DNA from: Entomortierella parvispora E1425 | Lineage: Eukaryota > Fungi > Mortierellomycota | Length of the DNA stretch: 64,000 nucleotides | Assembly (NCBI GenBank): GCA_020891255.1 | Contig: BQFW01000004.1 | Location: 1,798,001 to 1,862,000 of the forward strand | Direction: 5' to 3' | Shown here: piece after piece, positions 8,091-19,753 of the stretch | Layout of the letters: the number at the start of each line of letters is the position of its first letter | Position numbering within the stretch: position 1 is the first letter of the stretch | Notes under the pieces: generated by a model | Seen by the model: the letters and a program-made list of their open reading frames with translations, nothing else | Databases searched by the model: none | What the model was told of the DNA's origin: nothing | Position numbers and translations under genes: made by a program

Positions 8091-10128
8091 ATGCTTGCCT
8101 CCATCAAGAGTCTTGCCCTCGTGGCCTTGGCCTCTACTGTGGCCCAAGCCGCTGTTGTGACCTACGACTGGAACATCACTTATGTCAACACCAACGCTGA
8201 CGGTCTCTTTGAGCGTCGTGTCATTGGTGTCAACGGACAGTTCCCGTATGTTTTTGCTTTGTTTTCTTTTTCTACTTTGCTTTTCTACTTTCAAGTCTGC
8301 TTCTGCAGTCTACCCTGGGGAAACAGTTTTGTTTTGGCCCACCCCTTGTCTTGCATCCAGTCAAACTGACCCTTGTGCCCTCTTGCCGTCTTTTACACTC
8401 TAGTCCTCCTGCTATCAATGTCACCTTGAACGACACCTTGGTCATCAACGTCATCAATAACCTCGACCAACCCACTTCGCTGCACTCTCACGGTCTCTTC
8501 CAGACCGGCAACGCCCAGTTCGATGGTCCTTCCATGGTCACCCAGTGCCCCATCCCCCCAGGTGCCAACTTCACCTACACCATCCCAATTGAGCAGCACG
8601 GTACCTACTGGATCCACGGACATTTCGGTGGTCAGTATGTCGATGGTCTTCGTGCCCCCTTGATCATCCACAACCTCAACGAGACCTACAAGTACGATGA
8701 GGAGTACACCATCGCCCTTGCTGGTAAGCAAATTGTCTTTATTATTATTCTGAAAAGACTGAGAAAGAATCACAACCGCAAAGTCTCTAACCACATGTAA
8801 ACCCTTTTTTTCCCTCCTTGGCGACTTGAACAGACTGGTACCACCAGGAGCACTCTGTCATGCTGGAGCAGTACTTGTCCATCTTCAACCCCAGTGGAGC
8901 CGAGCCCGTCCCCGAGTCGGCTTTGATCAACCAGATGCTCGACCAGAAGTTCAACTTTGTCCCTGGCAAGACCTACCGTCTCCGTATCATCAACATGTCT
9001 GCTTTGGCAATGTTCCATTTCCACATTGACGGCCACGAGATTGAGATTATTGAGGTTGACGGTATCGATGTCGAGCGCCAAAAAGTCTCCAGCTTCCCCA
9101 TTACTGCTGCCCAGCGTTACTCTGTCTTGGTCACTGCCAAGGCTGATACCTCCATGAACTACATCATCCACGCCGATATGGACCCCGCCATGTTCGATGT
9201 CGTTCCCGATGAGCTGGTCTTGAACATCACTGGAACCATCGTCTATAACGAGGCTTCGCCTTTGGCCCCCGAGGAGCTCAGCCAGTGGGAGCCCTTCAAC
9301 GATGCCGAGCTCGTCCCTGTTGTTCCCCTCGCCACCCAGGCTCCTGACCAGGTCTTTGCTTTGACCGCCGCTTTCAGCGTCTTGAACGACTACAGCAACA
9401 AGGCCACCTTCAACGATATCACCTATGTCATGCCCAAGGTTCCCTCTTTGTACACTGCTCTCAGCACCGGCAACTTGTCCTCCAACCCTGAAGTCTATGG
9501 CAAGTATGCTCACCCCATGGTCCTCAAGCACAACGACTGGGTCGAGATCGTTATCAACAACGATGATCCCGGTAACCATCCTTTCCACTTGCACGGACAC
9601 GTCTTCCAGATTGTCGGACGTGGAGAGGGCAAGTACGACCCCAGCAGCGGTCCTTACCCCGGCTACTTGAACACCACCAACCCCTCGCGTCGTGATACCG
9701 TCTTGGTTCCCTCCGAGGAGAACGTTGCCATCCGTTTCCAGGCCAACAACCCCGGTGTCTGGCTCTTCCATTGCCACATTGAATGGCATTTGCAGGCCGG
9801 TCTCGCTACCACCATCATTGAGGCCCCCGAGATCATGCCCAGCGTTCTCAAGGTCGACCCCACTCACTACGAGCACTGCAAGGCTTTGGGTATTCCCTTC
9901 AGTGGAAACGCCGCCGGTAAGGAGGGCTTGGACCTCGCCGGTGCCAACCTCGGCCCCGACCCTCTTCCTGGTACCTTCACCGGCAAGGGTATCGTTGCCT
10001 TGGTCTTCACCATCATTGCAGCTCTCTTGGGTCTTGGAACTGTCATCTGGTACGCCCGTGAGGACGATGCCCAGATCGCCTCCCAGATCGCCCAGGCTAA
10101 GATTGCTCAGGAGGAGGAGACTCACTAA
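8091..10128 (+). CDS. FET3: Fet3-type multicopper ferroxidase (3 exons: 8091-8245, 8404-8723, 8834-10128; 589 aa)
   Basis: Signal peptide and four Cu-binding motifs ([25 protein letters not shown]). Acidic Fe-binding positions are retained (GAEPVP, DPAMFD, DDPGNHP), and there is a C-terminal TM helix. Codon usage is strongly biased to C-ending codons. Confidence 0.97.
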
Positions 10129-10459: not shown

Positions 10460-11882
10460 TTGATGGAACCCAGAGTCGGGCTCGGTGGGTATTGGACAGT
10501 GGATCCCTTATATGCACTGGACGATTGAAAAAAAATCTCCTTCAGTGTCTGCTTGAGCACTGCACATTGTTTTTTGTTTGGCGTATTTCGGTCTCACTGC
10601 GAACCCTGGCAGGCCACAATACTCACGAATCATAATTTTTATTCCGGAGCCTCGTCACGTCTGTAAGCTAGAACTTAGGCAATATGAAATACTCGACTTG
10701 CGATCATTGTGTTGGCTCCAACTAGATTTTGCAGTACCTCGTCGGACAAGCAGGATATGGAGATGTTGCAACGGAAACTCGAAGACATCGAGACTGGGAC
10801 CCAGCCATAGACACAGGACGAGGGCAATATATGCGCGTTGCTGCCCACATCGTTTCAAACATGACGCTGGACCCATACACTCTCACCATTCGATCAGTCG
10901 ATCAATAAGCCGCAGTAAATAAATGTGACCTTGCTCATGACACATGAACTACACTGTCGCTTTCTCGCTTCCTTTTTCTCCGCCTTTGTCTCATCAACAT
11001 CCACACGCTTTCCCAGATTGTACGCGTTTACTCCAGATTACACGCGTCCATTCGAGTGTGCTTTCAAGTCTTGCCCTCATTGCCGTCGCTGTAAGTGCCA
11101 TTCAGCCATTGCATCTGCATTGCTCTCTACTCATGGCGTGGCTTATTGTATTGTATTTTACTTCTCAACTTCGATGTAATCTTAAAATTCTTATGTCCAT
11201 TCTACAGTTCGAAAACTACACTGTTTATCCGTCGATGTCCTCCAAAAGGAAAGCCTGGGTTAAGATGGAGAGAGAGAGAGAGAGCTGCCATCTACAGTAA
11301 AAGGCCTGGCGCTTATTAGCCTGCCTCCTTTCTTCGAGTCCAAGAGAATCACTTTCTTGAGTCTTTGAGTTGTTGGCCCTTCTTTCGTTTTTGTGTAACT
11401 TGATTCTCGCTGGAAAGCAGAAAAAAGCAGATTTCCAGAGAGAATCAAAAGGTGATTCTCTTGGGCACTCAAGAAAGGAGGGCGCCTATTATTTCTTGAA
11501 GATCTCCCAAACTGAATTCAACCCCCTGTCCTACTTTGAATATCGTGGAGCCACAACTGTCGGATTGACCGCGTTACTGAACATCAAGGTACGAGCGGAG
11601 TCCCTGTTTAAAAATGTGTTGGATACATCCATGCATTTCTAAGATGTCCTTTTTTCGTGCTCACTTCTATGGGCGATCAATGACCAATACATGCAGTCTG
11701 TAAAGGAGGAATTACGCAAAACAAAGAAGGAGGAGGCGAAGAACAGGATGCTGGGACAAGGATGTTCAGGGGATGCTCACAACCCTATAATCTACACCCC
11801 AACCAAGAAGCAAAAAGCAGCCGTCTCGCAACCCCCCTCACCAAAGAAAGCTCGTCAGAGCCGACCTTCCTCGAAAAAATAG
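10460..11882 (+). pseudogene. Possible decayed coding tract of an unidentified multicopy family
   Basis: Short protein-like stretches in shifting frames (RWVLDSG...CLLEH, ILDLRSLCWLQ, NPLSYFEYRGATTVGLTALLNIK, IIYTPTKK), a GTAAGT...CTACAG intron-like segment at about 11091-11207, and many stops. No intact gene model can be built. Confidence 0.3.
11324..11481. repeat. Nested imperfect inverted repeat (foldback)
   Basis: Outer arms 11324-11352 and 11452-11481 (CCTCCTTTCTT-c-GAGT--CCAAGAGAATCAC vs its reverse complement). Inner arms 11400-11416 and 11432-11448 pair at 16/17 positions. Confidence 0.85.
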
Positions 11883-12018: not shown

Positions 12019-15000
12019 TCAATGCAACATGGCGCCAAAGTCCATGACGTGTATCGTAGACCTATGGCCGACACGTTTTACAATGACAGCCCAACGATGC
12101 AAGCCATGGAGTGCAAATTTCACCTCGGCCGCCCGATCCAAAAATGCGACTGATCGAAGATTCATGGATTCCTCAGGCTTGAACACAGGGCGGCCTGATT
12201 TTGGCAAGACGTTGGTGCTCACAGATTCAGTATCCTCCTCTTCATCGTCAGACGATGTTGGGGGAGGAGACAAAGTCGATCCGCTGGAGAGAAAACTTGC
12301 AGTTTTGGTGGGCGTCCATGACCGTCGCGGCTCCCTCGACAATGCATTTTGCGCTTCGGCCGACACTACAAGATCCATGCTAGCAACAGACTCTGAGCTG
12401 CAAATGTCCCAAAGTTGAAGACTTGCCGTTTTGCCTCCAGGCGTCATAGTTTGACAGGCGAGGAATCGCGCCGATGCCAAAGCGGAAGAAATTGAGCTAC
12501 CAGCGTGGACAAAATAGACGAGCAGTCATCTACTCTGTTAAATGTCTATAGATCGAAAATTTTGCAACTGAAGTCAACATAACACCGTAATCTGCACTCT
12601 ACCTTGTTCCACGATATTTGTGCACTAGTTCGATCTTTGAACCATTCATGATAAAGAGGGCGCACTGATCATACTCATTCTCAAGATGATATGAAGCTCC
12701 ACTTTTTACCCCGAGGCAAATGAAAATAGGCCATTGAGAGGCGGGCAGGGTGCCCGAGGTTGCTTGAGAACCACCATTGAATGTCTGGAGAAAGTTGCTT
12801 GGGACTGTGGCAGTTACAATGACAGGCTTTAGCTGCTGCTGGGGAGAGCTTGTAAGGCGGAACGATGAGAGAATAGAGGCTAAATCGATTATGGCGGCTG
12901 GTTTGCTGCTCGACATCAAATCCCTACAAAAGAGCACCATGTTGTATTAGAAAAATAGAGGACCGTATCGATTCAAGTACGCAAATAGAGACTGGGGTTT
13001 TGTTTTACCATAGGACAATTGTCTCGCCAAAAGTGGCAACAGTCAGCGACTCTGAGTTTTTCACTTGTACAATGGACGAGGCGATCTCATTTGTGTTGAC
13101 ATGGATCAGAGTTTGAGATGGGCAAGGATTGTCAGAGCCATGTATCGTTGAGACATCGACCAAGCAGATGGATCCAGAAGAGGTCGATCCTGCAACGATC
13201 AACTTGCGATTGTCCTGTCCCTCCATAACAAAGCTGTTACAGCTCTGGGAAAATGGGGCGCCTTTCCAGAATGCGCTTGAGAGGCTGGGGGGGTCGCCAG
13301 GCACAGCTTCGTTCGTCAAAGGAACTCGCAGTAGGGTATAATTTATCATGTCCACCACTACGGCCATGGAGTCATCCGATGCAAACATGATCCGCGTGGC
13401 TGCTGAAGTCTTTTCGAGTTGAACGCGCTTCATCCACTTGCAGTCTGACAACGGGACCTTGTTCTCCAGCTGCCAGAACTGTACTTGGGCCTTTGTCTCT
13501 ACGGCTATCCACTCCTCGAGGTTACTGCAGACAGTGGCAAGAATGTTCTCCTTAAATTCGTCAAAGCACCAGACACCATCCACAAGCTTCGAGCTTTCAG
13601 TGGGCAAGACCTGTTCCTGGTCATCGCCACTTGGTACAGATTCACCGACTTCCTCAAGCAGAGAGTTTTGAAGAAACATTGGTACCGCAAGTGTGGCCTG
13701 GAGGGAGCCTTGGCTGCTTTCAGAGCATTGTGAATCAGGCACGTCTGCAAGGTCAGTGATCGATGGAGCATCAAGCCCTTGGGCGTTGCTCTTAGCTCGT
13801 TCAGCAATCACGGGCTCTTCTGGGGTTTGCTCATGTAGGCCTTCAAAATCCCTAAGGGACTCATCGTCATCTTCCACACTTGGTGGGACCTCGAAAGGCG
13901 AATCAACGTCGGGCTCCTGGCTATGTTTCCCAGATTCCTCCTTGTGGCTTTCGAGGGAGGTGCTTGTGGGAAATTCAAGCTTGAATTCAGGTATAGAAGG
14001 GGCCTCTTGAGGTTTCAGCAGTGAGTCATGCGTCGCTTCTCGAGGCTGGGTATAAGGCTTTTGGGCTTCGAATTCAACGGGTGGGCGGACGAGCTCATCG
14101 TGATGCATGAAACGGGAGTGGCTGATCGCTTCAGACGAAACATGGGAGCTGTCGTGAACCGTTCGTAGTTGGATACGCGGGCTGACAAGTCTCTCTTGAG
14201 GCGGGATGTGTGGCTGCTGCGAGGCCTCCAGTGAGTGGACAAGTATTTTTTGATGTGGCTCCTGTAATTGGACTTGAGAGGGTTGTGGCGCATGCAGAGA
14301 CGGGAGACGCAAGGGGTGAATGGACTCTTGAGAAAGCGTATGGGGGTTCGATTGTGCGTTCACTCTTGCCGTATTTATCGCGCGGTTAATGGTGGGTCGA
14401 GGCTGAATCGCATGGTCGAAATGAGGAGCTGTGCCTGTCAGTGTAAACGACCCTCGCTCAATGTGCCCGCGATTGCCGCTGAGAATATTGACAATGCTGT
14501 CACGACTGTTTGCTAAAGCCGGTCTCGGGTTGATTTGGGACCTGATGACAGCAACAGAATCTCCTTCAAGCGTCGTCCTTCGACGACCGGAGTAAGGCCG
14601 ACGAGGGTCCACGTTCTCCTTGTCGTCATCATCGTCGCTACTGCCGCCTAGTGTCACTGTACGCTTCCTGTGACCCTTCTTGCTCTCATTCTGATTATTG
14701 GCGGGCAAAGGTCGCTGTCTCTTGGCCGGTCTTTTTGTTTGCCCATCCTGTGTTTTCTTGTTGACATTCGCCTTTGGGTCCAGAACAGTTGGTCCCTTTG
14801 TCAAGTCGTCCTTTTTGTTGACATTTGACTTGGGGTTCAGAACAGTCGATCCTGTTAGTGAGAGGTCGGTTTGAGGTCGATTCGTGCTCTTGGCTCCCAA
14901 AATGGTGGGTTTTTGACGATGGGCAACATCTAGCTTGTTCACGACCTGAGAGGAGCTCTCCTTCTTAAGGCGTACGGCAGACTTGTCAAGGACTGGAATA

Positions 15001-15439
15001 TTGGCCTTGCCTGTGGCATTAGCCATGATGGTCGTCAGAGGTTTACTCGGCATGCGGGCAGTCGTATCGTTTTTGGTTTGAGCGACGGAGTGTGTTGCTG
15101 TTGAAGGGGCCTCTGCAAAGCGTTTAAGTGCGGGCACCAACGCAGCCGCCAGCTTTTGGTATTCGCTCTTTTCATGAACGGCCAGTTCACGCGTCTTGAA
15201 TATATGGATTGTACAAGGAATAAAAATAAAACAAGAATATAAGTGAAAATAAACATACGCGAGATTGGAATGACGGAGGCAGTTACTGCTGTTTGGGCTG
15301 ATGTGGTCGTCGGGCAACGGTGGTCAAGAGAGTTTGATGCTGCTGTTCCGAGGAGAAGCGAAGGTCATCATACTTGACTGATTTCGATATAATGGCGGAT
15401 ACTCTGCTGGAGAATCAGCAGCTCTGCGCCTGACGACAT
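12019..15439 (-). CDS. Large protein with N-terminal helix, long disordered middle and C-terminal WD40-like propeller; possibly PALB2-like (4 exons: 15439-15374, 15194-13009, 12923-12603, 12496-12019; ~1016 aa)
   Basis: The GT-AG joins give 3051 nt in frame and link three ORFs of the track. The C-terminal region has beta-strand-rich repeats ending VQFWQ, IVLWD and LQLWD. Confidence 0.75.
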
Positions 15440-15908
15440 GTGTCTGGTGAAGTCAAGCTGAGAGGGGAGATTGCCTGCCAGGGGCGGGATCAGCGAGGAA
15501 GGTGGATATCAGGGAATAGGGAATGAGGAGTGAGCTGAAGATGAGGTGATAGAGAAGAAAGAGAAGACGAGAGGGAATGAAGGCAACGGGAAGGAGAGAG
15601 GGAAGGAGAGCCATGGACCGACCGAAACAAAGACGCGGCGCGCGATGCGACTGCGACAGTGACGGTGGCTTGCTCGCCTTTGCCACCAACTTGTGTCTTG
15701 CTCCGAACATCCTTGCGCCACAGCTTGGAGTGTGTGTGACCTTGCAGACTTGAGCCAGCATGGAAAAAAAAGAGCGCGGAATAAAGGAGACGCAACAACA
15801 TCCTCCTTACTCATTCACTCGCTCACTCATTCTTTCCTTCTTTCCCTTCCTCATTGGTCCAGTACTTCACCTTGCCCGCCTGCTCCTCTCTGCATCGCAA
15901 TCCAAAAA

Positions 15909-17273
15909 ATGCCTTCTCACCGCGCCATCGAAATCCCTGAAGTTCTCAGCCATATCGCTACCTTCTTGCCTCCCGCTGACCTCGCCCACGCCTGCAGAGT
16001 CAGCAGGTCCTGGTTTACTGTCTTTATTGCACAGCTTTGGCGAACCCTCTCACCAGATCAATTCACGGACGGCCACCTCCTTCCATCTCTGCCGCGCTAT
16101 ACCTCCTATGTTCGCGACCTCTGTTGCGCTCGACTCATGCCCTTGGTCGATCCGGGCCCAGGACTGTCTCTTCTGACCGCGTTCACGACTCCCGAGATTG
16201 GCAAACATAGTGTTGAGCTTATCATCGCTCTATTGAGACGAAATGCCGATCTGCGAGATGTTCACCTGCGCTGCCGCCTGGTGATCGATACAGAGTACTT
16301 TTCACAGCTGATCGACACCTTGACAGGGCTGCGACACTTGGAAAGTCTGGACATGGATACACACAAAATTTCTGCCAATTTCATATTTCTCATATTGAAA
16401 GGTTTGCCAGGGCTGAAACACCTTCGCCTCGAGGAGACTAGAAAAGCGCCTAAATGGTCCCTATCACGGCCGCAGTCACCCAGCGATCCCAATCCTCATC
16501 CTCTGCTATTTGGCCTCCAAAAGCTACGGGTCGTCTGCCGTCGTCTTCCTCTAGATCCCATACTTGAAGTGGTACAGATGACACCAGATCTGAGCGCGCT
16601 GGAGATGGTGGCCCTGGGCGGGGATCAGCCATCAGACCTCAGTGCTCTCAAGAAGTTGGCACATACATTGCACGAGTCCTGTCCTAGACTCCGAGATGTG
16701 CTATTGGAAGAAGATGAGATGAGTATTCGCGATTTCTACCACTTTCTATCTTTGTTCGATTGGATCAACGTACGTCGATGGATGCCATTTCGAAGTCTGA
16801 ACTTTAGTAACAATTGTCCATCCGGCAGCGAATTACTCGATCTCGTCCTAAGTGGGTCTGAGGTTCTGCAGGACACGCTGGAGACCCTAGTGATAGATAA
16901 TCCCACCTTCACAAAGTCAAGCTCGGTCAGAGTAGTCGAAATCTTGAGTACATTTAGGAAGCTGCGAAAACTCAGCCTGGGAAAGACCACTTGTGTGATA
17001 CGAGTGGCAGACCTTTTCAACACCGTGATTCTAGATGGAAGGAAGAGAGTCAAAATACTTAAGCCTTGGGCCTGCAAGGACCTAGTAATGCTGAACGTAT
17101 GGATCGAGGGCGAATATTGCGGCTGGTGCCCTCCGGGAGTTGTGGACATCAAGGACGACTACCGTGAAGATCGCTTCTACAGGGATGGGTTTCCGCTTTA
17201 CGAACAACTGAAAGCACAGTTGGACAGTTACCGCAGACTGGACCAGAAGCAGATTAGATACACGTATTTATAG
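15909..17273 (+). CDS. F-box / RNI-like leucine-rich repeat protein (intronless, 454 aa)
   Basis: N-terminal F-box (AIEIPEVLSHIATFLPPADLAHACRVSRSWF), LxxLxL repeats and a C-terminal PWACKDLVML motif. Confidence 0.85.
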   Translation: MPSHRAIEIPEVLSHIATFLPPADLAHACRVSRSWFTVFIAQLWRTLSPDQFTDGHLLPSLPRYTSYVRDLCCARLMPLVDPGPGLSLLTAFTTPEIGKHSVELIIALLRRNADLRDVHLRCRLVIDTEYFSQLIDTLTGLRHLESLDMDTHKISANFIFLILKGLPGLKHLRLEETRKAPKWSLSRPQSPSDPNPHPLLFGLQKLRVVCRRLPLDPILEVVQMTPDLSALEMVALGGDQPSDLSALKKLAHTLHESCPRLRDVLLEEDEMSIRDFYHFLSLFDWINVRRWMPFRSLNFSNNCPSGSELLDLVLSGSEVLQDTLETLVIDNPTFTKSSSVRVVEILSTFRKLRKLSLGKTTCVIRVADLFNTVILDGRKRVKILKPWACKDLVMLNVWIEGEYCGWCPPGVVDIKDDYREDRFYRDGFPLYEQLKAQLDSYRRLDQKQIRYTYL

Positions 17274-17543: not shown

Positions 17544-19753
17544 ATGGCCATCACAACCCAGGACAGTACTGCCTCAGCCTCTGGCACAGAGTCAGAGACG
17601 ACCCATGCCAACACCTACAACAACAGTGCCACCGGCAACAACACTAATGCAAAGCACAAATCACGTCGCAGAAAGAAGAAGGCCCACACGACCCCTGCCA
17701 ATGGCCATACTGAAGCAGAGCCAAAGGAGGATCAAGAGGTACTGCAGGAGCTCATCGAGCTCATGATGGATTCAATGCATTAGTGGGCACAAAAAGTTAT
17801 TATAAAGACTTGCGTGTCCATGGATGAATGACTGCATGTTGTGCGATGATCAATGACTCTAACACACAATCTTCTCATGTCCTGTTTTGTTTTCTTCCCT
17901 ATAATAGCTAAAGGTTGAGGTCGAGTGGGTTGCAGAAAAGCCAATGGAACTCGCCCCAGGATTCGAACAATTCCAGGATGTATTCAAGCACTTTCAACTT
18001 CAGGATGCTGCCCCAGAGGTAAAGAAAGGATTATCAACTACGATGAACAGGCCACGTCATATTTTGTTTCTTGCGTGCAGTTTGACTAACTCTCTCTCTC
18101 ATTTTAATGGAAAAAAATATCATAGACAGAAACTGGAGACATGGAGCATGTTGAAAAGACAGAAAACAAATCGGACGCCTCAGGATCCGATTCTGAAGAC
18201 GACCCAGAGAAACAGGCTGCTAGCAAAAAGAAACTGAAGAGGTTGAATCGCATGAGTGTGGCAGTTCTGAAGCAGATGGCAAAGCACCCCGAGGTGGTTG
18301 AGTGGATTGATGTTACCTCATCTGATCCTAACCTGTTGGTTCAGCTCAAGGGATACCGCAACACGGTTCCTGTACCGGCACATTGGAGTCAAAAGCGTAA
18401 ATACCTTCAAGGAAAGCGTGGTATCGAAAAGGCTCCCTTTGACTTGCCCGATTTTATCAAGGACACTGGAATTATGGAGCTGAGAAACGCAGTCAAGGAG
18501 AAGGAAGATGCCAGCAAATTGAAGACCAAGACAAGAGAGCGTGTGCAGCCCAAGATGGGCAAGATCGATATCGACTATCAAAAGCTTCACGATGCCTTCT
18601 TCCGATACCAGACACGGCCTCGCCTATCCATGCATGGAGAGTTGTAAGTCAAAGAACCTTATCTCAAGGGCACATTCAATGCCCTTTTACTCCATCTAAT
18701 TCTTTTACTAACGACATGTCAACAACTATTTGATTTAATGTAGATACCATGAAGGAAAGGAGTTTGACGCAAAGGCAAAGGAAGTGAAGCCAGGCAATCT
18801 GTCGGAAGAGTTGATCGCAGCACTGTCTATTCCCCCTCTCGCCCCACCACCATGGCTTATCAACATGCAGCGCTATGGACCCCCACCTGGATACAAAAAC
18901 TTGAAGATTCCCGGCCTGAACGCCCCTATTCCCGAAGGCGCACAGTGGGGCTACCATCCCGGTGGATGGGGTAAACCTCCAGTGGATGAATTCAACAGAC
19001 CTTTGTACGGAGATGTCTTTGGATCTGCGCAAACTGAGGTTCAGTCGGCATACATGGAGCCAGTAGTCAAGACATTGTGGGGAGAACTGGACCCAGAAGA
19101 AGAGGAGGAGGAGGAAGAGGACGAGGAAGAGGAGGAGGAAGAGGAGGAAGAGGAGGGCGAAGAAGAGAAGGACGAGGAAGATCTCCAGGAAGGTCTTGTC
19201 ACTCCCAGTGGCATGCAGAGTGTTGCCAGCGGATTGGAGACGCCAGACGTTATCGAATTGCGCAAGGATTCCAGGAGGGCAGCAACGCAGGACGACGAGG
19301 AAAAGACACTCTACACAGTCATTCCACAAAAGCAGACCAACATTACTGGGTTTATGGGCTCACAGCATGTCTACGATCTTTCGTCCGCTACAGCATCATC
19401 ATCGTCTTCTCGAAAGGTAACTTTGTGTGTTTCGTTGAGCTAGTATTCTGTCGAGACTCCATTATTATTTTTTTGCTTAGAAGCTAACTCTGGCCCTTTC
19501 TCTCACTTTTCCATTCATTTAGCGCAAGATGGGAGAAGTCGAAGTCGCACTGGATCCTTCCGAGCTGGTCGATATGGACGATGAGACGCTGAAGGAGAAG
19601 TACGAGCACGGATTACAGGCGGCCCAACCAGAGGCTCACCGCGAAGATATGAGCGATCTCTTGGAGGAACATTTGGCAAAGAAGGCCAAGGAGAGAAAGC
19701 AGAACCAGGAAAAGAAGTCTGGCTCAAAGGACAAGGACAAGTTCAAATTCTAA
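17544..19753 (+). CDS. SF3B2: Splicing factor 3B subunit 2 (SAP145/Cus1), multi-exon
   Basis: HPEVVEWIDV, NTVPVPAHWSQKRKYLQGKRGIEKAPFDLP, IDIDYQKLHDAFF and the proline-rich PPPWLINMQRYGPPP...WGYHPGGWGKPP; C-terminal KDKDKFKF. Confidence 0.96.

What the first reader, a model, noticed from the sequence alone, without database searches (positions are those of the whole stretch)
12019..15439. Possible fungal PALB2-like protein (N-terminal helix plus C-terminal WD40 propeller)
Seen: spliced 1016-aa model with a short helical N-terminus, about 550 aa of disordered sequence and a C-terminal beta-propeller-like region. Established: this is the architecture of animal PALB2, the BRCA1-BRCA2 bridge, which is not generally recognised in fungi. 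Comparison with human PALB2 from memory: N-terminal EKSEYQKLAAAL vs LKREYSKTLARL; EIASSIVQVKNSESLTVATFGETIVLWDL vs [30 protein letters not shown]; ARFL...ASLQLWDI vs GRFL...GTIAIWDL. Inference: a remote PALB2 orthologue would push the BRCA2-loading module back to the opisthokont ancestor. The similarity may instead be generic WD40.
Basis: inference. Interest (0 to 1): 0.7.

Follow-up and report, generated by a model that had tools for sequence, protein, structure and literature searches.

The report
Possible fungal PALB2-like propeller scaffold
This is a real four-exon gene of the soil fungus Entomortierella parvispora whose protein has the layout of the human BRCA2 partner PALB2, and whose predicted C-terminal propeller matches PALB2's best of all solved structures, but only by a tie-level margin and with no sequence-level support, so the PALB2 reading is plausible and unproven.

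Summary
A minus-strand four-exon gene at 12019-15439 encodes exactly the annotated 1016-aa hypothetical protein EMPS_03152 of Entomortierella parvispora. It has a conserved ~50-aa N-terminal module, about 500 aa of low-complexity sequence with short conserved motifs, and a C-terminal seven-bladed beta-propeller (AlphaFold2 pLDDT 76.5).

The PALB2 reading is partly supported.
- **For:** An exhaustive structural search of 48,161 PDB representatives ranks the human PALB2 WD40 domain first (3eu7_A, Z 23.1). A PALB2_WD40 cluster gives the best query-normalised TM-score in the ESM Atlas. The genome has BRCA2 and no other PALB2 candidate.
- **Against:** The structural lead is about 1 Z, which counts as a tie with RbBP5 and Apaf-1. 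Foldseek ranks generic WD40 proteins first. No member matches Pfam PALB2_WD40. Family profiles hit only canonical WD40 proteins, weakly. The N-terminal module does not match PALB2's coiled coil. Relatives are found only in Mortierellaceae.

New here is a family-wide ABBA-like, KEN and D-box-like cassette that suggests APC/C control, plus tandem TLPxPxFL motifs.

I put PALB2 orthology or equivalence at about 0.4. Profile-profile comparison and complex modelling with BRCA2 could not be run and would decide it. The scan had not noted this before.

The parts
12019..15439 (-). Whole coding span of the gene (start codon to stop codon), 1016 aa, equal to NCBI EMPS_03152 (P0001)
15374..15439 (-). Exon 1 (aa 1-22)
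   Evidence: donor GTATGA
13009..15194 (-). Exon 2 (aa 23-750 plus two bases of codon 751)
   Evidence: acceptor TTCAAG, donor GTAAAA
12603..12923 (-). Exon 3 (last base of codon 751, aa 752-857, two bases of codon 858)
12019..12496 (-). Exon 4 (last base of codon 858, aa 859-1016, stop codon)
15111..15439 (-). Conserved N-terminal module, aa 1-50 (spans intron 1). Family consensus SGAEMLVLQQxIKQYI..QTRxLTxHELxEFEKIKExLLPxLLRY, with a nearly invariant Pro at aa 43
   Evidence: no Pfam or PDB match
14613..14621 (-). KEN box (K214-E215-N216), found in this region in all 22 family members checked
13710..13742 (-). Acidic SQ/SE cluster VPDSQCSESSQ (aa 507-517); S510 is nearly invariant and S513 invariant in the family
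13671..13694 (-). Single degenerate copy (TLAVPMFL, aa 523-530) of the family motif T[LF]P[MA]PxFL, which occurs in 1-5 tandem copies in other members
12022..13580 (-). Seven-bladed non-canonical beta-propeller, aa 561-1016 (spans introns 2 and 3)
12133..12351 (-). Low-confidence loop between blades 6 and 7 (aa 907-979) carrying the conserved STLSPPP motif (aa 931-937, 12259-12279)

Best explanation
The gene encodes a nuclear scaffold protein built like PALB2. It is most likely a very diverged PALB2 orthologue, or a functional equivalent, in Mortierellaceae.

**Proposed mechanism.**
1. The C-terminal seven-bladed propeller is a docking platform for a short peptide of a partner. BRCA2, whose N-terminus in this clade carries a conserved Trp-containing motif, is the prime candidate.
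2. The conserved N-terminal ~50-aa module mediates self-association or binding of a second partner. In animals that partner is the BRCA1 coiled coil.
3. The ~500-aa low-complexity middle carries basic NLS or DNA-binding-like patches, an acidic SQ/SE cluster and tandem TLPxPxFL docking motifs.
4. An ABBA-like, KEN and D-box-like cassette would have APC/C destroy the protein in G1, confining it to S/G2, when homologous recombination is used.

**Shown here.** The gene model; the conservation pattern; the predicted seven-bladed fold; PALB2 as the nearest solved structure (within a tie); BRCA2 present in the genome; and the motifs.

**Inferred.** Every interaction, the nuclear and cell-cycle behaviour, the helical and disordered character of the N-terminus and middle, and homology to PALB2 itself.
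For: - The architecture is confirmed.
- An exhaustive VIA-align search of 48,161 PDB representatives ranks the PALB2 WD40 domain (3eu7_A) first: Z 23.1, rmsd 3.1, 290 of 313 residues aligned, 13% identity, reaching the last residue of both proteins. Rank 2 scores 21.7, and ranks 2-50 form a plateau from 21.7 to 19.7.
- It is again first in the second look, with Z 23.2.
- In the ESM Atlas shape search, a PF16756 cluster has the best query-normalised TM-score (0.57), the lowest rmsd (3.5) and 310 aligned residues among the ten family rows shown.
- BRCA2 is present (OB1 domain E 3e-35; P0048, 1872 aa) and is conserved across Mortierellaceae, with an N-terminal motif [DE]xxF[DE]xxLWxL[VI]P.
- PF16756 finds no other candidate in the 38.9-Mb genome. 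Its only weak hit is a canonical WD40 exon.
- PMC11061109 searched early-diverging fungi with PF16756. In the passages I read it reports BRCA1 and BRCA2 for Mortierellomycotina and gives no PALB2 hit.
- PMC3969565 dates PALB2 to just before the vertebrates. The 'missing partner' gap in fungi is therefore real.
Against: - There is no sequence-level link. PF16756 does not match any of 19 members, whole or in sub-regions, at E <= 10.
- Family profiles against PDB sequences never list PALB2. They weakly list canonical WD40 proteins instead.
- Foldseek puts generic WD40 proteins first, and PALB2 is not in its top 50.
- The structural lead is only 0.9-1.4 Z. The apo PALB2 entry 2w18 (Z 22.1) is level with RbBP5 (22.3) and Apaf-1 (22.1).
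- The N-terminal profile finds no PALB2 coiled coil. It also has a nearly invariant proline inside its second conserved segment, unlike the continuous PALB2 coiled coil as I recall it.
- An HMM of the BRCA2 N-terminal motif of this clade does not find the fish BRCA2 'DPDWFNxL' PALB2-binding site.
- Language-model look-alikes are other divergent propellers (DCAF17, CRT10, VID27, YIG1), not PALB2.
- Relatives detectable by HMMER are confined to Mortierellaceae.
Confidence: 0.4

Rival explanations
1. A lineage-restricted propeller scaffold unrelated to PALB2. Its main role would be in an APC/C-controlled cell-cycle process, as an APC/C substrate or a pseudosubstrate-type regulator. The PALB2-like layout would be convergent, since an N-terminal partner or oligomerisation motif joined to a C-terminal WD40 domain is a common design.
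For: - An ABBA-like motif, an almost invariant KEN box and a cyclin-B-like D-box ([RK]xxLGxxTN) lie within about 50 residues of each other in most members.
- Relatives are found only in Mortierellaceae among 1.84 billion representative proteins.
- No sequence link to any known family.
- The structural scores for PALB2, RbBP5, Apaf-1 and WDR91 are within about 1 Z of each other.
Against: - E. parvispora itself has lost the ABBA-like and strict D-box motifs and keeps only KEN, so the cassette is not essential to the family.
- From my own knowledge, I know of no APC/C regulator with this architecture.
- PALB2 is still the single best structural match in three searches.
Confidence: 0.33
2. A substrate receptor of a cullin-RING ligase (DCAF-type). 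The N-terminal conserved module would dock on DDB1, as the helix-loop-helix of DDB2 and CSA does, and the propeller would present substrates.
For: - A DCAF17 cluster (score 0.89) and CRT10 clusters (0.84-0.89), CRT10 being an Rtt101/Cul4-linked protein by my own knowledge, are among the language-model look-alikes.
- The N-terminal conserved segments plus a C-terminal propeller fit the general DCAF plan.
Against: - These look-alike scores lie in the range that shuffled sequences also reach.
- No WDxR motif follows the conserved LWD repeats.
- About 500 aa separate the N-terminal module from the propeller, whereas in DDB2 and CSA they adjoin (my own knowledge).
- No DCAF structure is among the top 50 structural matches.
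Confidence: 0.1
3. A fast-evolving orthologue of another known propeller protein that scores nearly as well structurally, such as RbBP5/Swd1, Nup37, UTP18 or WDR91.
For: RbBP5 scores Z 21.7-22.3, Nup37 21.4, UTP18 21.1-21.3 and WDR91 20.7-21.6. All are within 1-2.5 Z of PALB2.
Against: - Those families normally place the propeller at or near the N-terminus, or lack the long N-terminal low-complexity region (my own knowledge).
- Identity in the structural alignments is lower for them (6-11%) than for PALB2 (13-14%).
- They are slowly evolving families. Their true orthologues should be recognisable by sequence, and this protein is not.
Confidence: 0.07

Closest known systems
Human PALB2 (FANCN); WD40 domain PDB 3EU7 / 2W18; Pfam PF16756
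   Same: Overall plan: a short conserved N-terminal module, hundreds of low-complexity residues with basic patches, and a compact seven-bladed non-canonical propeller that ends at the protein's last residues. PALB2 is the best structural neighbour of the predicted propeller (Z 23.1-23.2, rmsd 3.1-3.2, 93% of the PALB2 chain aligned). BRCA2 is present in the same genome.
   Different: No PF16756 match and no HMM-level similarity. The N-terminal module contains a conserved proline and shows no match to PALB2's coiled coil. It has a 73-residue loop between blades 6 and 7 carrying an STLSxPP motif, an ABBA-like/KEN/D-box-like cassette and tandem TLPxPxFL motifs; to my knowledge none of these is described for PALB2. 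ChAM, the MRG15-binding region and the KEAP1 motif could not be compared.
RbBP5 / Swd1 (COMPASS) propeller, PDB 5OV3, 6W5N, 6E29
   Same: A compact seven-bladed propeller. It is the second-best structural match (Z 21.7-22.3, rmsd 3.3).
   Different: In RbBP5 the propeller is N-terminal, followed by a tail (my own knowledge). Identity in the structural alignment is only 7-9%. No sequence similarity was detected.
Canonical WD40 repeat proteins (G-beta, WDR5, mLST8, RACK1, dynein IC2, Cdc20)
   Same: The fold. Blade 4 carries a WD-repeat-like '...SLxLASFGxxxVLWDL' motif that produces the weak HMM hits. These proteins are Foldseek's top matches.
   Different: Pfam WD40 (PF00400) and the family-specific propeller models do not match above noise. 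VIA Z scores are 2-3 units below PALB2.
APC/C degron cassettes of BubR1/Mad3, Bub1, Acm1, cyclins and securin (ABBA, KEN, D-box)
   Same: The order and spacing of an ABBA-like [ILMF]x[IV][YF]xD motif, KEN, and [RK]xxLGxxTN within about 50 residues in most family members. The comparison with the published consensus motifs is from my own knowledge.
   Different: It is attached to a C-terminal propeller. It is partly lost in E. parvispora itself. No functional test was made.

Membership tests
PALB2 | C-terminal seven-bladed WD40-type propeller ending at the protein's C-terminus | tested here: met
   AlphaFold2 model with pLDDT 76.5 and 28 strands in 7 blades. It aligns to PALB2 residues 856-1186 up to its last residue.
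PALB2 | Match to Pfam PALB2_WD40 (PF16756) at or above the gathering score of 27 bits | tested here: not met
   No hit at E <= 10 for the exons, the whole protein, 15-19 orthologues or their sub-regions. The whole-genome scan does not ring at this locus.
PALB2 | PALB2 is the nearest structural neighbour, clearly above other propellers | tested here: inconclusive
   Rank 1 in two VIA-align runs (Z 23.1 and 23.2) and best TM-score in the Atlas. The margin is only 0.9-1.4 Z, 2w18 scores 22.1 in a tie with RbBP5 and Apaf-1, and Foldseek prefers generic WD40 proteins.
PALB2 | Sequence homology shown by profile search, reciprocal search or profile-profile comparison | tested here: not met
   - Profile-versus-sequence searches found only Mortierellaceae relatives.
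- PDB profile searches list other WD40 proteins and never PALB2.
- Profile-profile comparison (hhalign) could not be run, because no PALB2 sequence was available by reference.
PALB2 | N-terminal coiled coil that homodimerises and binds the BRCA1 coiled coil | tested here: inconclusive
   A conserved ~50-aa N-terminal module exists. It has no Pfam or PDB match, including to PALB2 coiled-coil chains, and it contains a nearly invariant proline. Binding could not be tested.
PALB2 | Binding of the BRCA2 N-terminal peptide in the pocket between blades 4 and 5 | not testable with these tools
   - No complex prediction was available.
- Context: BRCA2 is present, with a conserved N-terminal LWxL[VI]P motif.
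- That motif's HMM does not detect the fish PALB2-binding site.
- Conservation is spread evenly over the blades, 0.42-0.61 per blade.
- The pocket location is taken from PMC12686622.
PALB2 | ChAM chromatin-association motif and MRG15-binding region in the middle of the protein | not testable with these tools
   There is no Pfam model for them and no PALB2 sequence by reference. The family has basic patches and conserved short motifs. A resemblance I recalled between the RRRTT...VAVIRSQI stretch and ChAM is confined to the two or three closest species and is therefore probably chance.
WD40 / beta-propeller superfamily | Seven four-stranded blades with N-terminal strand closure | tested here: met
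   Model topology. More than 680 PDB representatives score Z >= 8, and all the top ones are propellers.
APC/C substrates | KEN box and D-box in a low-complexity region | tested here: inconclusive
   KEN is present in 22 of 22 members. A D-box-like motif follows 12-18 aa after the KEN box in 13 of 22, but not in the E. parvispora protein. Function was not tested.

The most novel reading that the evidence does not exclude
The family is the true PALB2 orthologue of Mortierellomycotina. The BRCA1-PALB2-BRCA2 bridge would then predate the split of animals and fungi, and would have been lost or become unrecognisable in Dikarya. In this lineage its abundance would be gated by an APC/C degron cassette rather than by the KEAP1/CUL3 route of vertebrates.
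Probability: 0.35. Interest if true: 0.75.

Novelty: new variant of a known kind. Interest (0 to 1): 0.5.

Why it matters
PALB2 is held to be a late, animal-only addition to homologous recombination. PMC3969565 dates it to just before the vertebrates, and PMC8683258 notes that no C. elegans orthologue is known. BRCA2 and BRCA1, by contrast, are far older. How BRCA2 is recruited in organisms that have BRCA1 and BRCA2 but no recognisable PALB2 is an open question.

A PALB2-like partner in an early-diverging fungus with an animal-like repair gene set would make that question testable in a culturable fungus. It would also show that PALB2 escaped detection through fast sequence drift.

If the protein is not PALB2, it is still an uncharacterised, clade-wide propeller scaffold with an unusual degron cassette. 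That would be of modest interest.

Tried and rejected
**Sequence searches that found nothing useful**
1. Pfam scans of each exon, the whole database protein, 15-19 orthologues, blade sub-regions and the N-terminal module gave nothing above noise and never PF16756 or LisH.
2. PDB sequence searches with the single protein and four family profiles gave only weak canonical WD40 hits or random hits.
3. An exhaustive HMM search of 1.84 billion representatives, and a word-indexed search with a 19-sequence profile at E <= 10, found Mortierellaceae only, with no bridge to other fungi or animals.
4. ESM Atlas language-model look-alikes for the domain and for the whole protein were divergent propellers at chance-level scores. 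An unnamed Ascomycota 'WD40 repeat-like' cluster of 628-aa proteins shared 173-181 of 256 features and could not be followed up.

**Modelling and context checks**
5. The first AlphaFold2 run, on three sequences, was too poor to use (pLDDT 48).
6. An HMM of the Mortierellaceae BRCA2 N-terminal Trp motif, run against fish, plant, chytrid, Mucorales and basidiomycete BRCA2, gave no hit at the vertebrate PALB2-binding site.
7. Per-blade conservation showed no hot spot at blades 4-5.
8. The only PF16756 hit in the genome (C1:723934, E 0.2) is a canonical WD40 exon.
9. The neighbouring genes are a FET3-type multicopper oxidase, an F-box protein and an SF3b145-like protein, so there is no repair context.
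10. The single ACGCGT (MluI cell-cycle box) hexamer near the gene lies inside exon 2, not in the promoter.
11. The ChAM-like RRRTT...VAVIRSQI stretch is conserved only in the closest relatives, so I rejected it as evidence.

**Not run**
All whole-protein work used P0001, the identical database protein returned by the search tool, and the exons were searched singly by reference.
Full report
**1. What is there**

On the minus strand of the window lies a four-exon gene. Its exons are 15439-15374, 15194-13009, 12923-12603 and 12496-12022, with the stop at 12021-12019. The three introns are 179, 85 and 106 nt long and have GT..AG ends.

I searched the exons singly by reference and did not join them myself. 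The word-indexed protein search with exon 2 returned P0001, 'hypothetical protein EMPS_03152 [Entomortierella parvispora]', 1016 aa. All four exon translations are exact substrings of it, at residues 1-22, 23-750, 752-857 and 859-1016. Orthologues align without breaks across the exon 2/3 and 3/4 junctions.

The organism is a Mortierellomycotina fungus. The window is contig 4, 1798001-1862000, of a 38.9-Mb assembly.

**2. The family**

An exhaustive HMM search of 1.84 billion representative proteins with the C-terminal domain found 33 proteins at E <= 0.001. The full-length ones are about 960-1140 aa, with the domain at the C-terminus. Every hit that carries a name, either itself or through a cluster member, is from Mortierellaceae: Entomortierella, Mortierella, Linnemannia, Podila, Dissophora, Gamsiella, Modicella, Haplosporangium, Lobosporangium, Actinomortierella and Benniella. 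All are annotated as hypothetical. A second search with a 19-sequence profile reached no further. Identity between genera is only 20-35%, so the family evolves fast.

**3. Anatomy**

*a. N-terminal module.* Residues 1-50 are a conserved block with the consensus SGAEMLVLQQxIKQYI..QTRxLTxHELxEFEKIKExLLPxLLRY. A nearly invariant proline sits at position 43. The block has no Pfam or PDB match.

*b. Low-complexity middle.* Residues ~55-550 are poorly conserved but carry short motifs shared across the family:
- basic KKRPK/KRRR patches;
- an ABBA-like [ILMF]x[IV][YF]xD.EN motif;
- a KEN box, present in 22 of 22 members (K214-N216 here);
- a cyclin-B-like [RK]xxLGxxTN motif 12-18 residues after the KEN box in 13 of 22 members, though not in E. 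parvispora;
- an acidic EIPxS[QE]xS cluster (VPDSQCSESSQ here);
- one to five tandem copies of T[LF]P[MA]PxFL, with one degenerate copy here.

*c. Propeller.* Residues 561-1016 fold as a seven-bladed propeller in an AlphaFold2 model built on 27 family sequences (pLDDT 76.5, pTM 0.76). The N-terminal strand closes blade 7. A 73-residue low-confidence loop between blades 6 and 7 carries an STLSxPP motif found in all 22 members. Pfam's WD40 models do not recognise the domain.

**4. Is it PALB2? Structural evidence**

VIA-align against 48,161 PDB representatives, a search that does not depend on Foldseek, ranks 3eu7_A first. This is the PALB2 WD40 domain with the BRCA2 peptide. It scores Z 23.1 and rmsd 3.1, with 290 of 313 residues aligned, 13% identity, and model residues 10-461 matched to chain 856-1186. 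RbBP5 follows at 21.7, and ranks 2-50 form a flat plateau down to 19.7.

A second look at Foldseek's best 1000 chains again puts 3eu7_A first (Z 23.2). There, however, other RbBP5 chains reach 22.3, Apaf-1 reaches 22.1, and the apo PALB2 entry 2w18 scores 22.1.

In the ESM Atlas shape search, a chordate PF16756 cluster is one of the ten family rows listed. It has the best query-normalised TM-score (0.57), the lowest rmsd (3.5) and 310 aligned residues. Foldseek itself ranks G-beta, mLST8 and WDR5 first, and PALB2 is outside its top 50.

My reading is that PALB2 is consistently the best or joint-best structural neighbour among several hundred propeller families. A random divergent propeller would seldom achieve that. 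The margin is still too small to prove specific kinship.

**5. Is it PALB2? Sequence evidence**

None was found.
- PF16756 does not match the exons, the whole protein, 15-19 orthologues or their blade sub-regions at E <= 10.
- Scanned over the whole genome, PF16756 gives only one weak hit (E 0.2), and that hit is a canonical WD40 exon.
- Family profiles against PDB sequences give weak hits to WDR24 (E 0.007), dynein IC2, RACK1, B55, COP1, NEDD1, Cdc20 and Tup1. All of these centre on the WD-repeat-like blade-4 motif, and PALB2 never appears.
- The N-terminal profile hits nothing related.
- Language-model look-alikes are other divergent propellers, at scores that shuffled sequences also reach.

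However, the competing hits are all insignificant too, and the sensitive test, profile-profile comparison, could not be run because no PALB2 sequence was obtainable by reference.

The blade-4 similarity (IV.W[DN]L preceded by a small or Thr-rich strand) is what any WD repeat shows. A ChAM-like stretch that I noticed (RRRTT...VAVIRSQI) is conserved only in the two or three closest species, so I discount it.

**6. Context**

The genome encodes BRCA2 (OB1 domain E 3e-35; P0048, 1872 aa, named as such by NCBI). Mortierellaceae BRCA2 N-termini share several motifs: CPxHxxGHPT, [DE]xxF[DE]xxLWxL[VI]PxxFRP, RKRRxSxPS and DxNPFxV. The Trp-containing motif is the kind of short hydrophobic segment that could dock on a propeller. 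However, an HMM of it does not detect the fish BRCA2 'DPDWFNxL' site that corresponds to the PALB2-binding motif.

PMC11061109 reports BRCA1 and BRCA2 in Mortierellomycotina and lists PF16756 among its search models. In the passages I read it reports no PALB2 hit. PMC3969565 dates PALB2 to just before the vertebrates, and PMC8683258 notes that no C. elegans orthologue is known. I found no paper claiming a fungal PALB2.

The neighbouring genes are a multicopper oxidase, an F-box protein and an SF3b145-like protein. They give no functional hint.

**7. Mechanism and odds**

The best specific explanation, at about 0.4, is a very diverged PALB2-type scaffold. Its propeller would dock a partner peptide, with BRCA2 the prime candidate. 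Its N-terminal module would bind a second partner or the protein itself. Its middle would carry nuclear-targeting or DNA-binding patches and docking motifs, and APC/C degrons would limit it to S/G2. The fold, the motifs and the presence of BRCA2 are shown. All the interactions are inferred.

The main rival, at about 0.33, is an unrelated clade-restricted scaffold whose defining feature is the ABBA-like/KEN/D-box-like cassette. Lesser rivals are a DCAF-type ligase receptor (0.1) and a drifted member of another propeller family such as RbBP5/Swd1, Nup37 or WDR91 (0.07).

**8. Verdict**

Architecture and structure point to PALB2, while sequence methods do not.
- Because a defining feature (PF16756 membership) was tested and not met, I do not file the protein as a PALB2 family member. 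I describe it as PALB2-like in plan and fold.
- It is an uncharacterised variant of a known kind, a WD40 scaffold.
- Interest is moderate (0.5). It would rise to about 0.75 if profile-profile comparison or complex modelling confirms the PALB2 link.

Noticed in passing
window 14613-14621 (KEN) and orthologues P0004-P0047, about residues 140-280: Most family members carry an ABBA-like [ILMF]x[IV][YF]xD.EN motif, a KEN box and a cyclin-B-like [RK]xxLGxxTN D-box within about 50 residues. This looks like an APC/C degron or pseudosubstrate cassette. E. parvispora keeps only KEN.
   Followed up: partly
window 13671-13694; orthologues about residues 390-580: The short motif T[LF]P[MA]PxFL, followed by acidic residues, is repeated 1-5 times at a spacing of about 16-50 residues (mostly ~20) in the family; Gamsiella has five copies. 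The binding partner is unknown.
   Followed up: partly
L003 4318-4690 (G000:C2:2478317-2478689); P0048 residues 1-220: Mortierellaceae BRCA2 proteins share four N-terminal motifs: CPxHxxGHPT, [DE]xxF[DE]xxLWxL[VI]PxxFRP, RKRRxSxPS and DxNPFxV. As far as I know none has been described. The Mucorales BRCA2 (P0097) starts with an acidic 'DDFLDDWGDL' stretch that resembles the fish 'DPDWFNxL' site by eye only.
   Followed up: partly
window 15693-17270 (+): The divergently oriented neighbour is a 526-aa open reading frame with an F-box-like domain (E 6e-09). The rest of it looked leucine-rich-repeat-like by eye and was not checked.
   Followed up: no
window 8860-10125 (+) and 18141-19440 (+): A FET3-type multicopper oxidase (Cu-oxidase domains) and an SF3b145/Cus1-like gene (DUF382 plus PSP) flank the locus.
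   Followed up: no
window 11022-11047: Two ACGCGT (MluI cell-cycle box) hexamers lie 20 bp apart, downstream of the gene's 3' end, between it and the multicopper oxidase gene. The window as a whole has 14 such sites against 6.7 expected.
   Followed up: no
ESM Atlas (no coordinates): An unnamed Ascomycota cluster, 'putative WD40 repeat-like protein' (628 aa, 52 members), shares 173-181 of 256 language-model features with this protein. That is at the level the tool associates with same-family hits, so it could be a dikaryan relative. It could not be retrieved.
   Followed up: no
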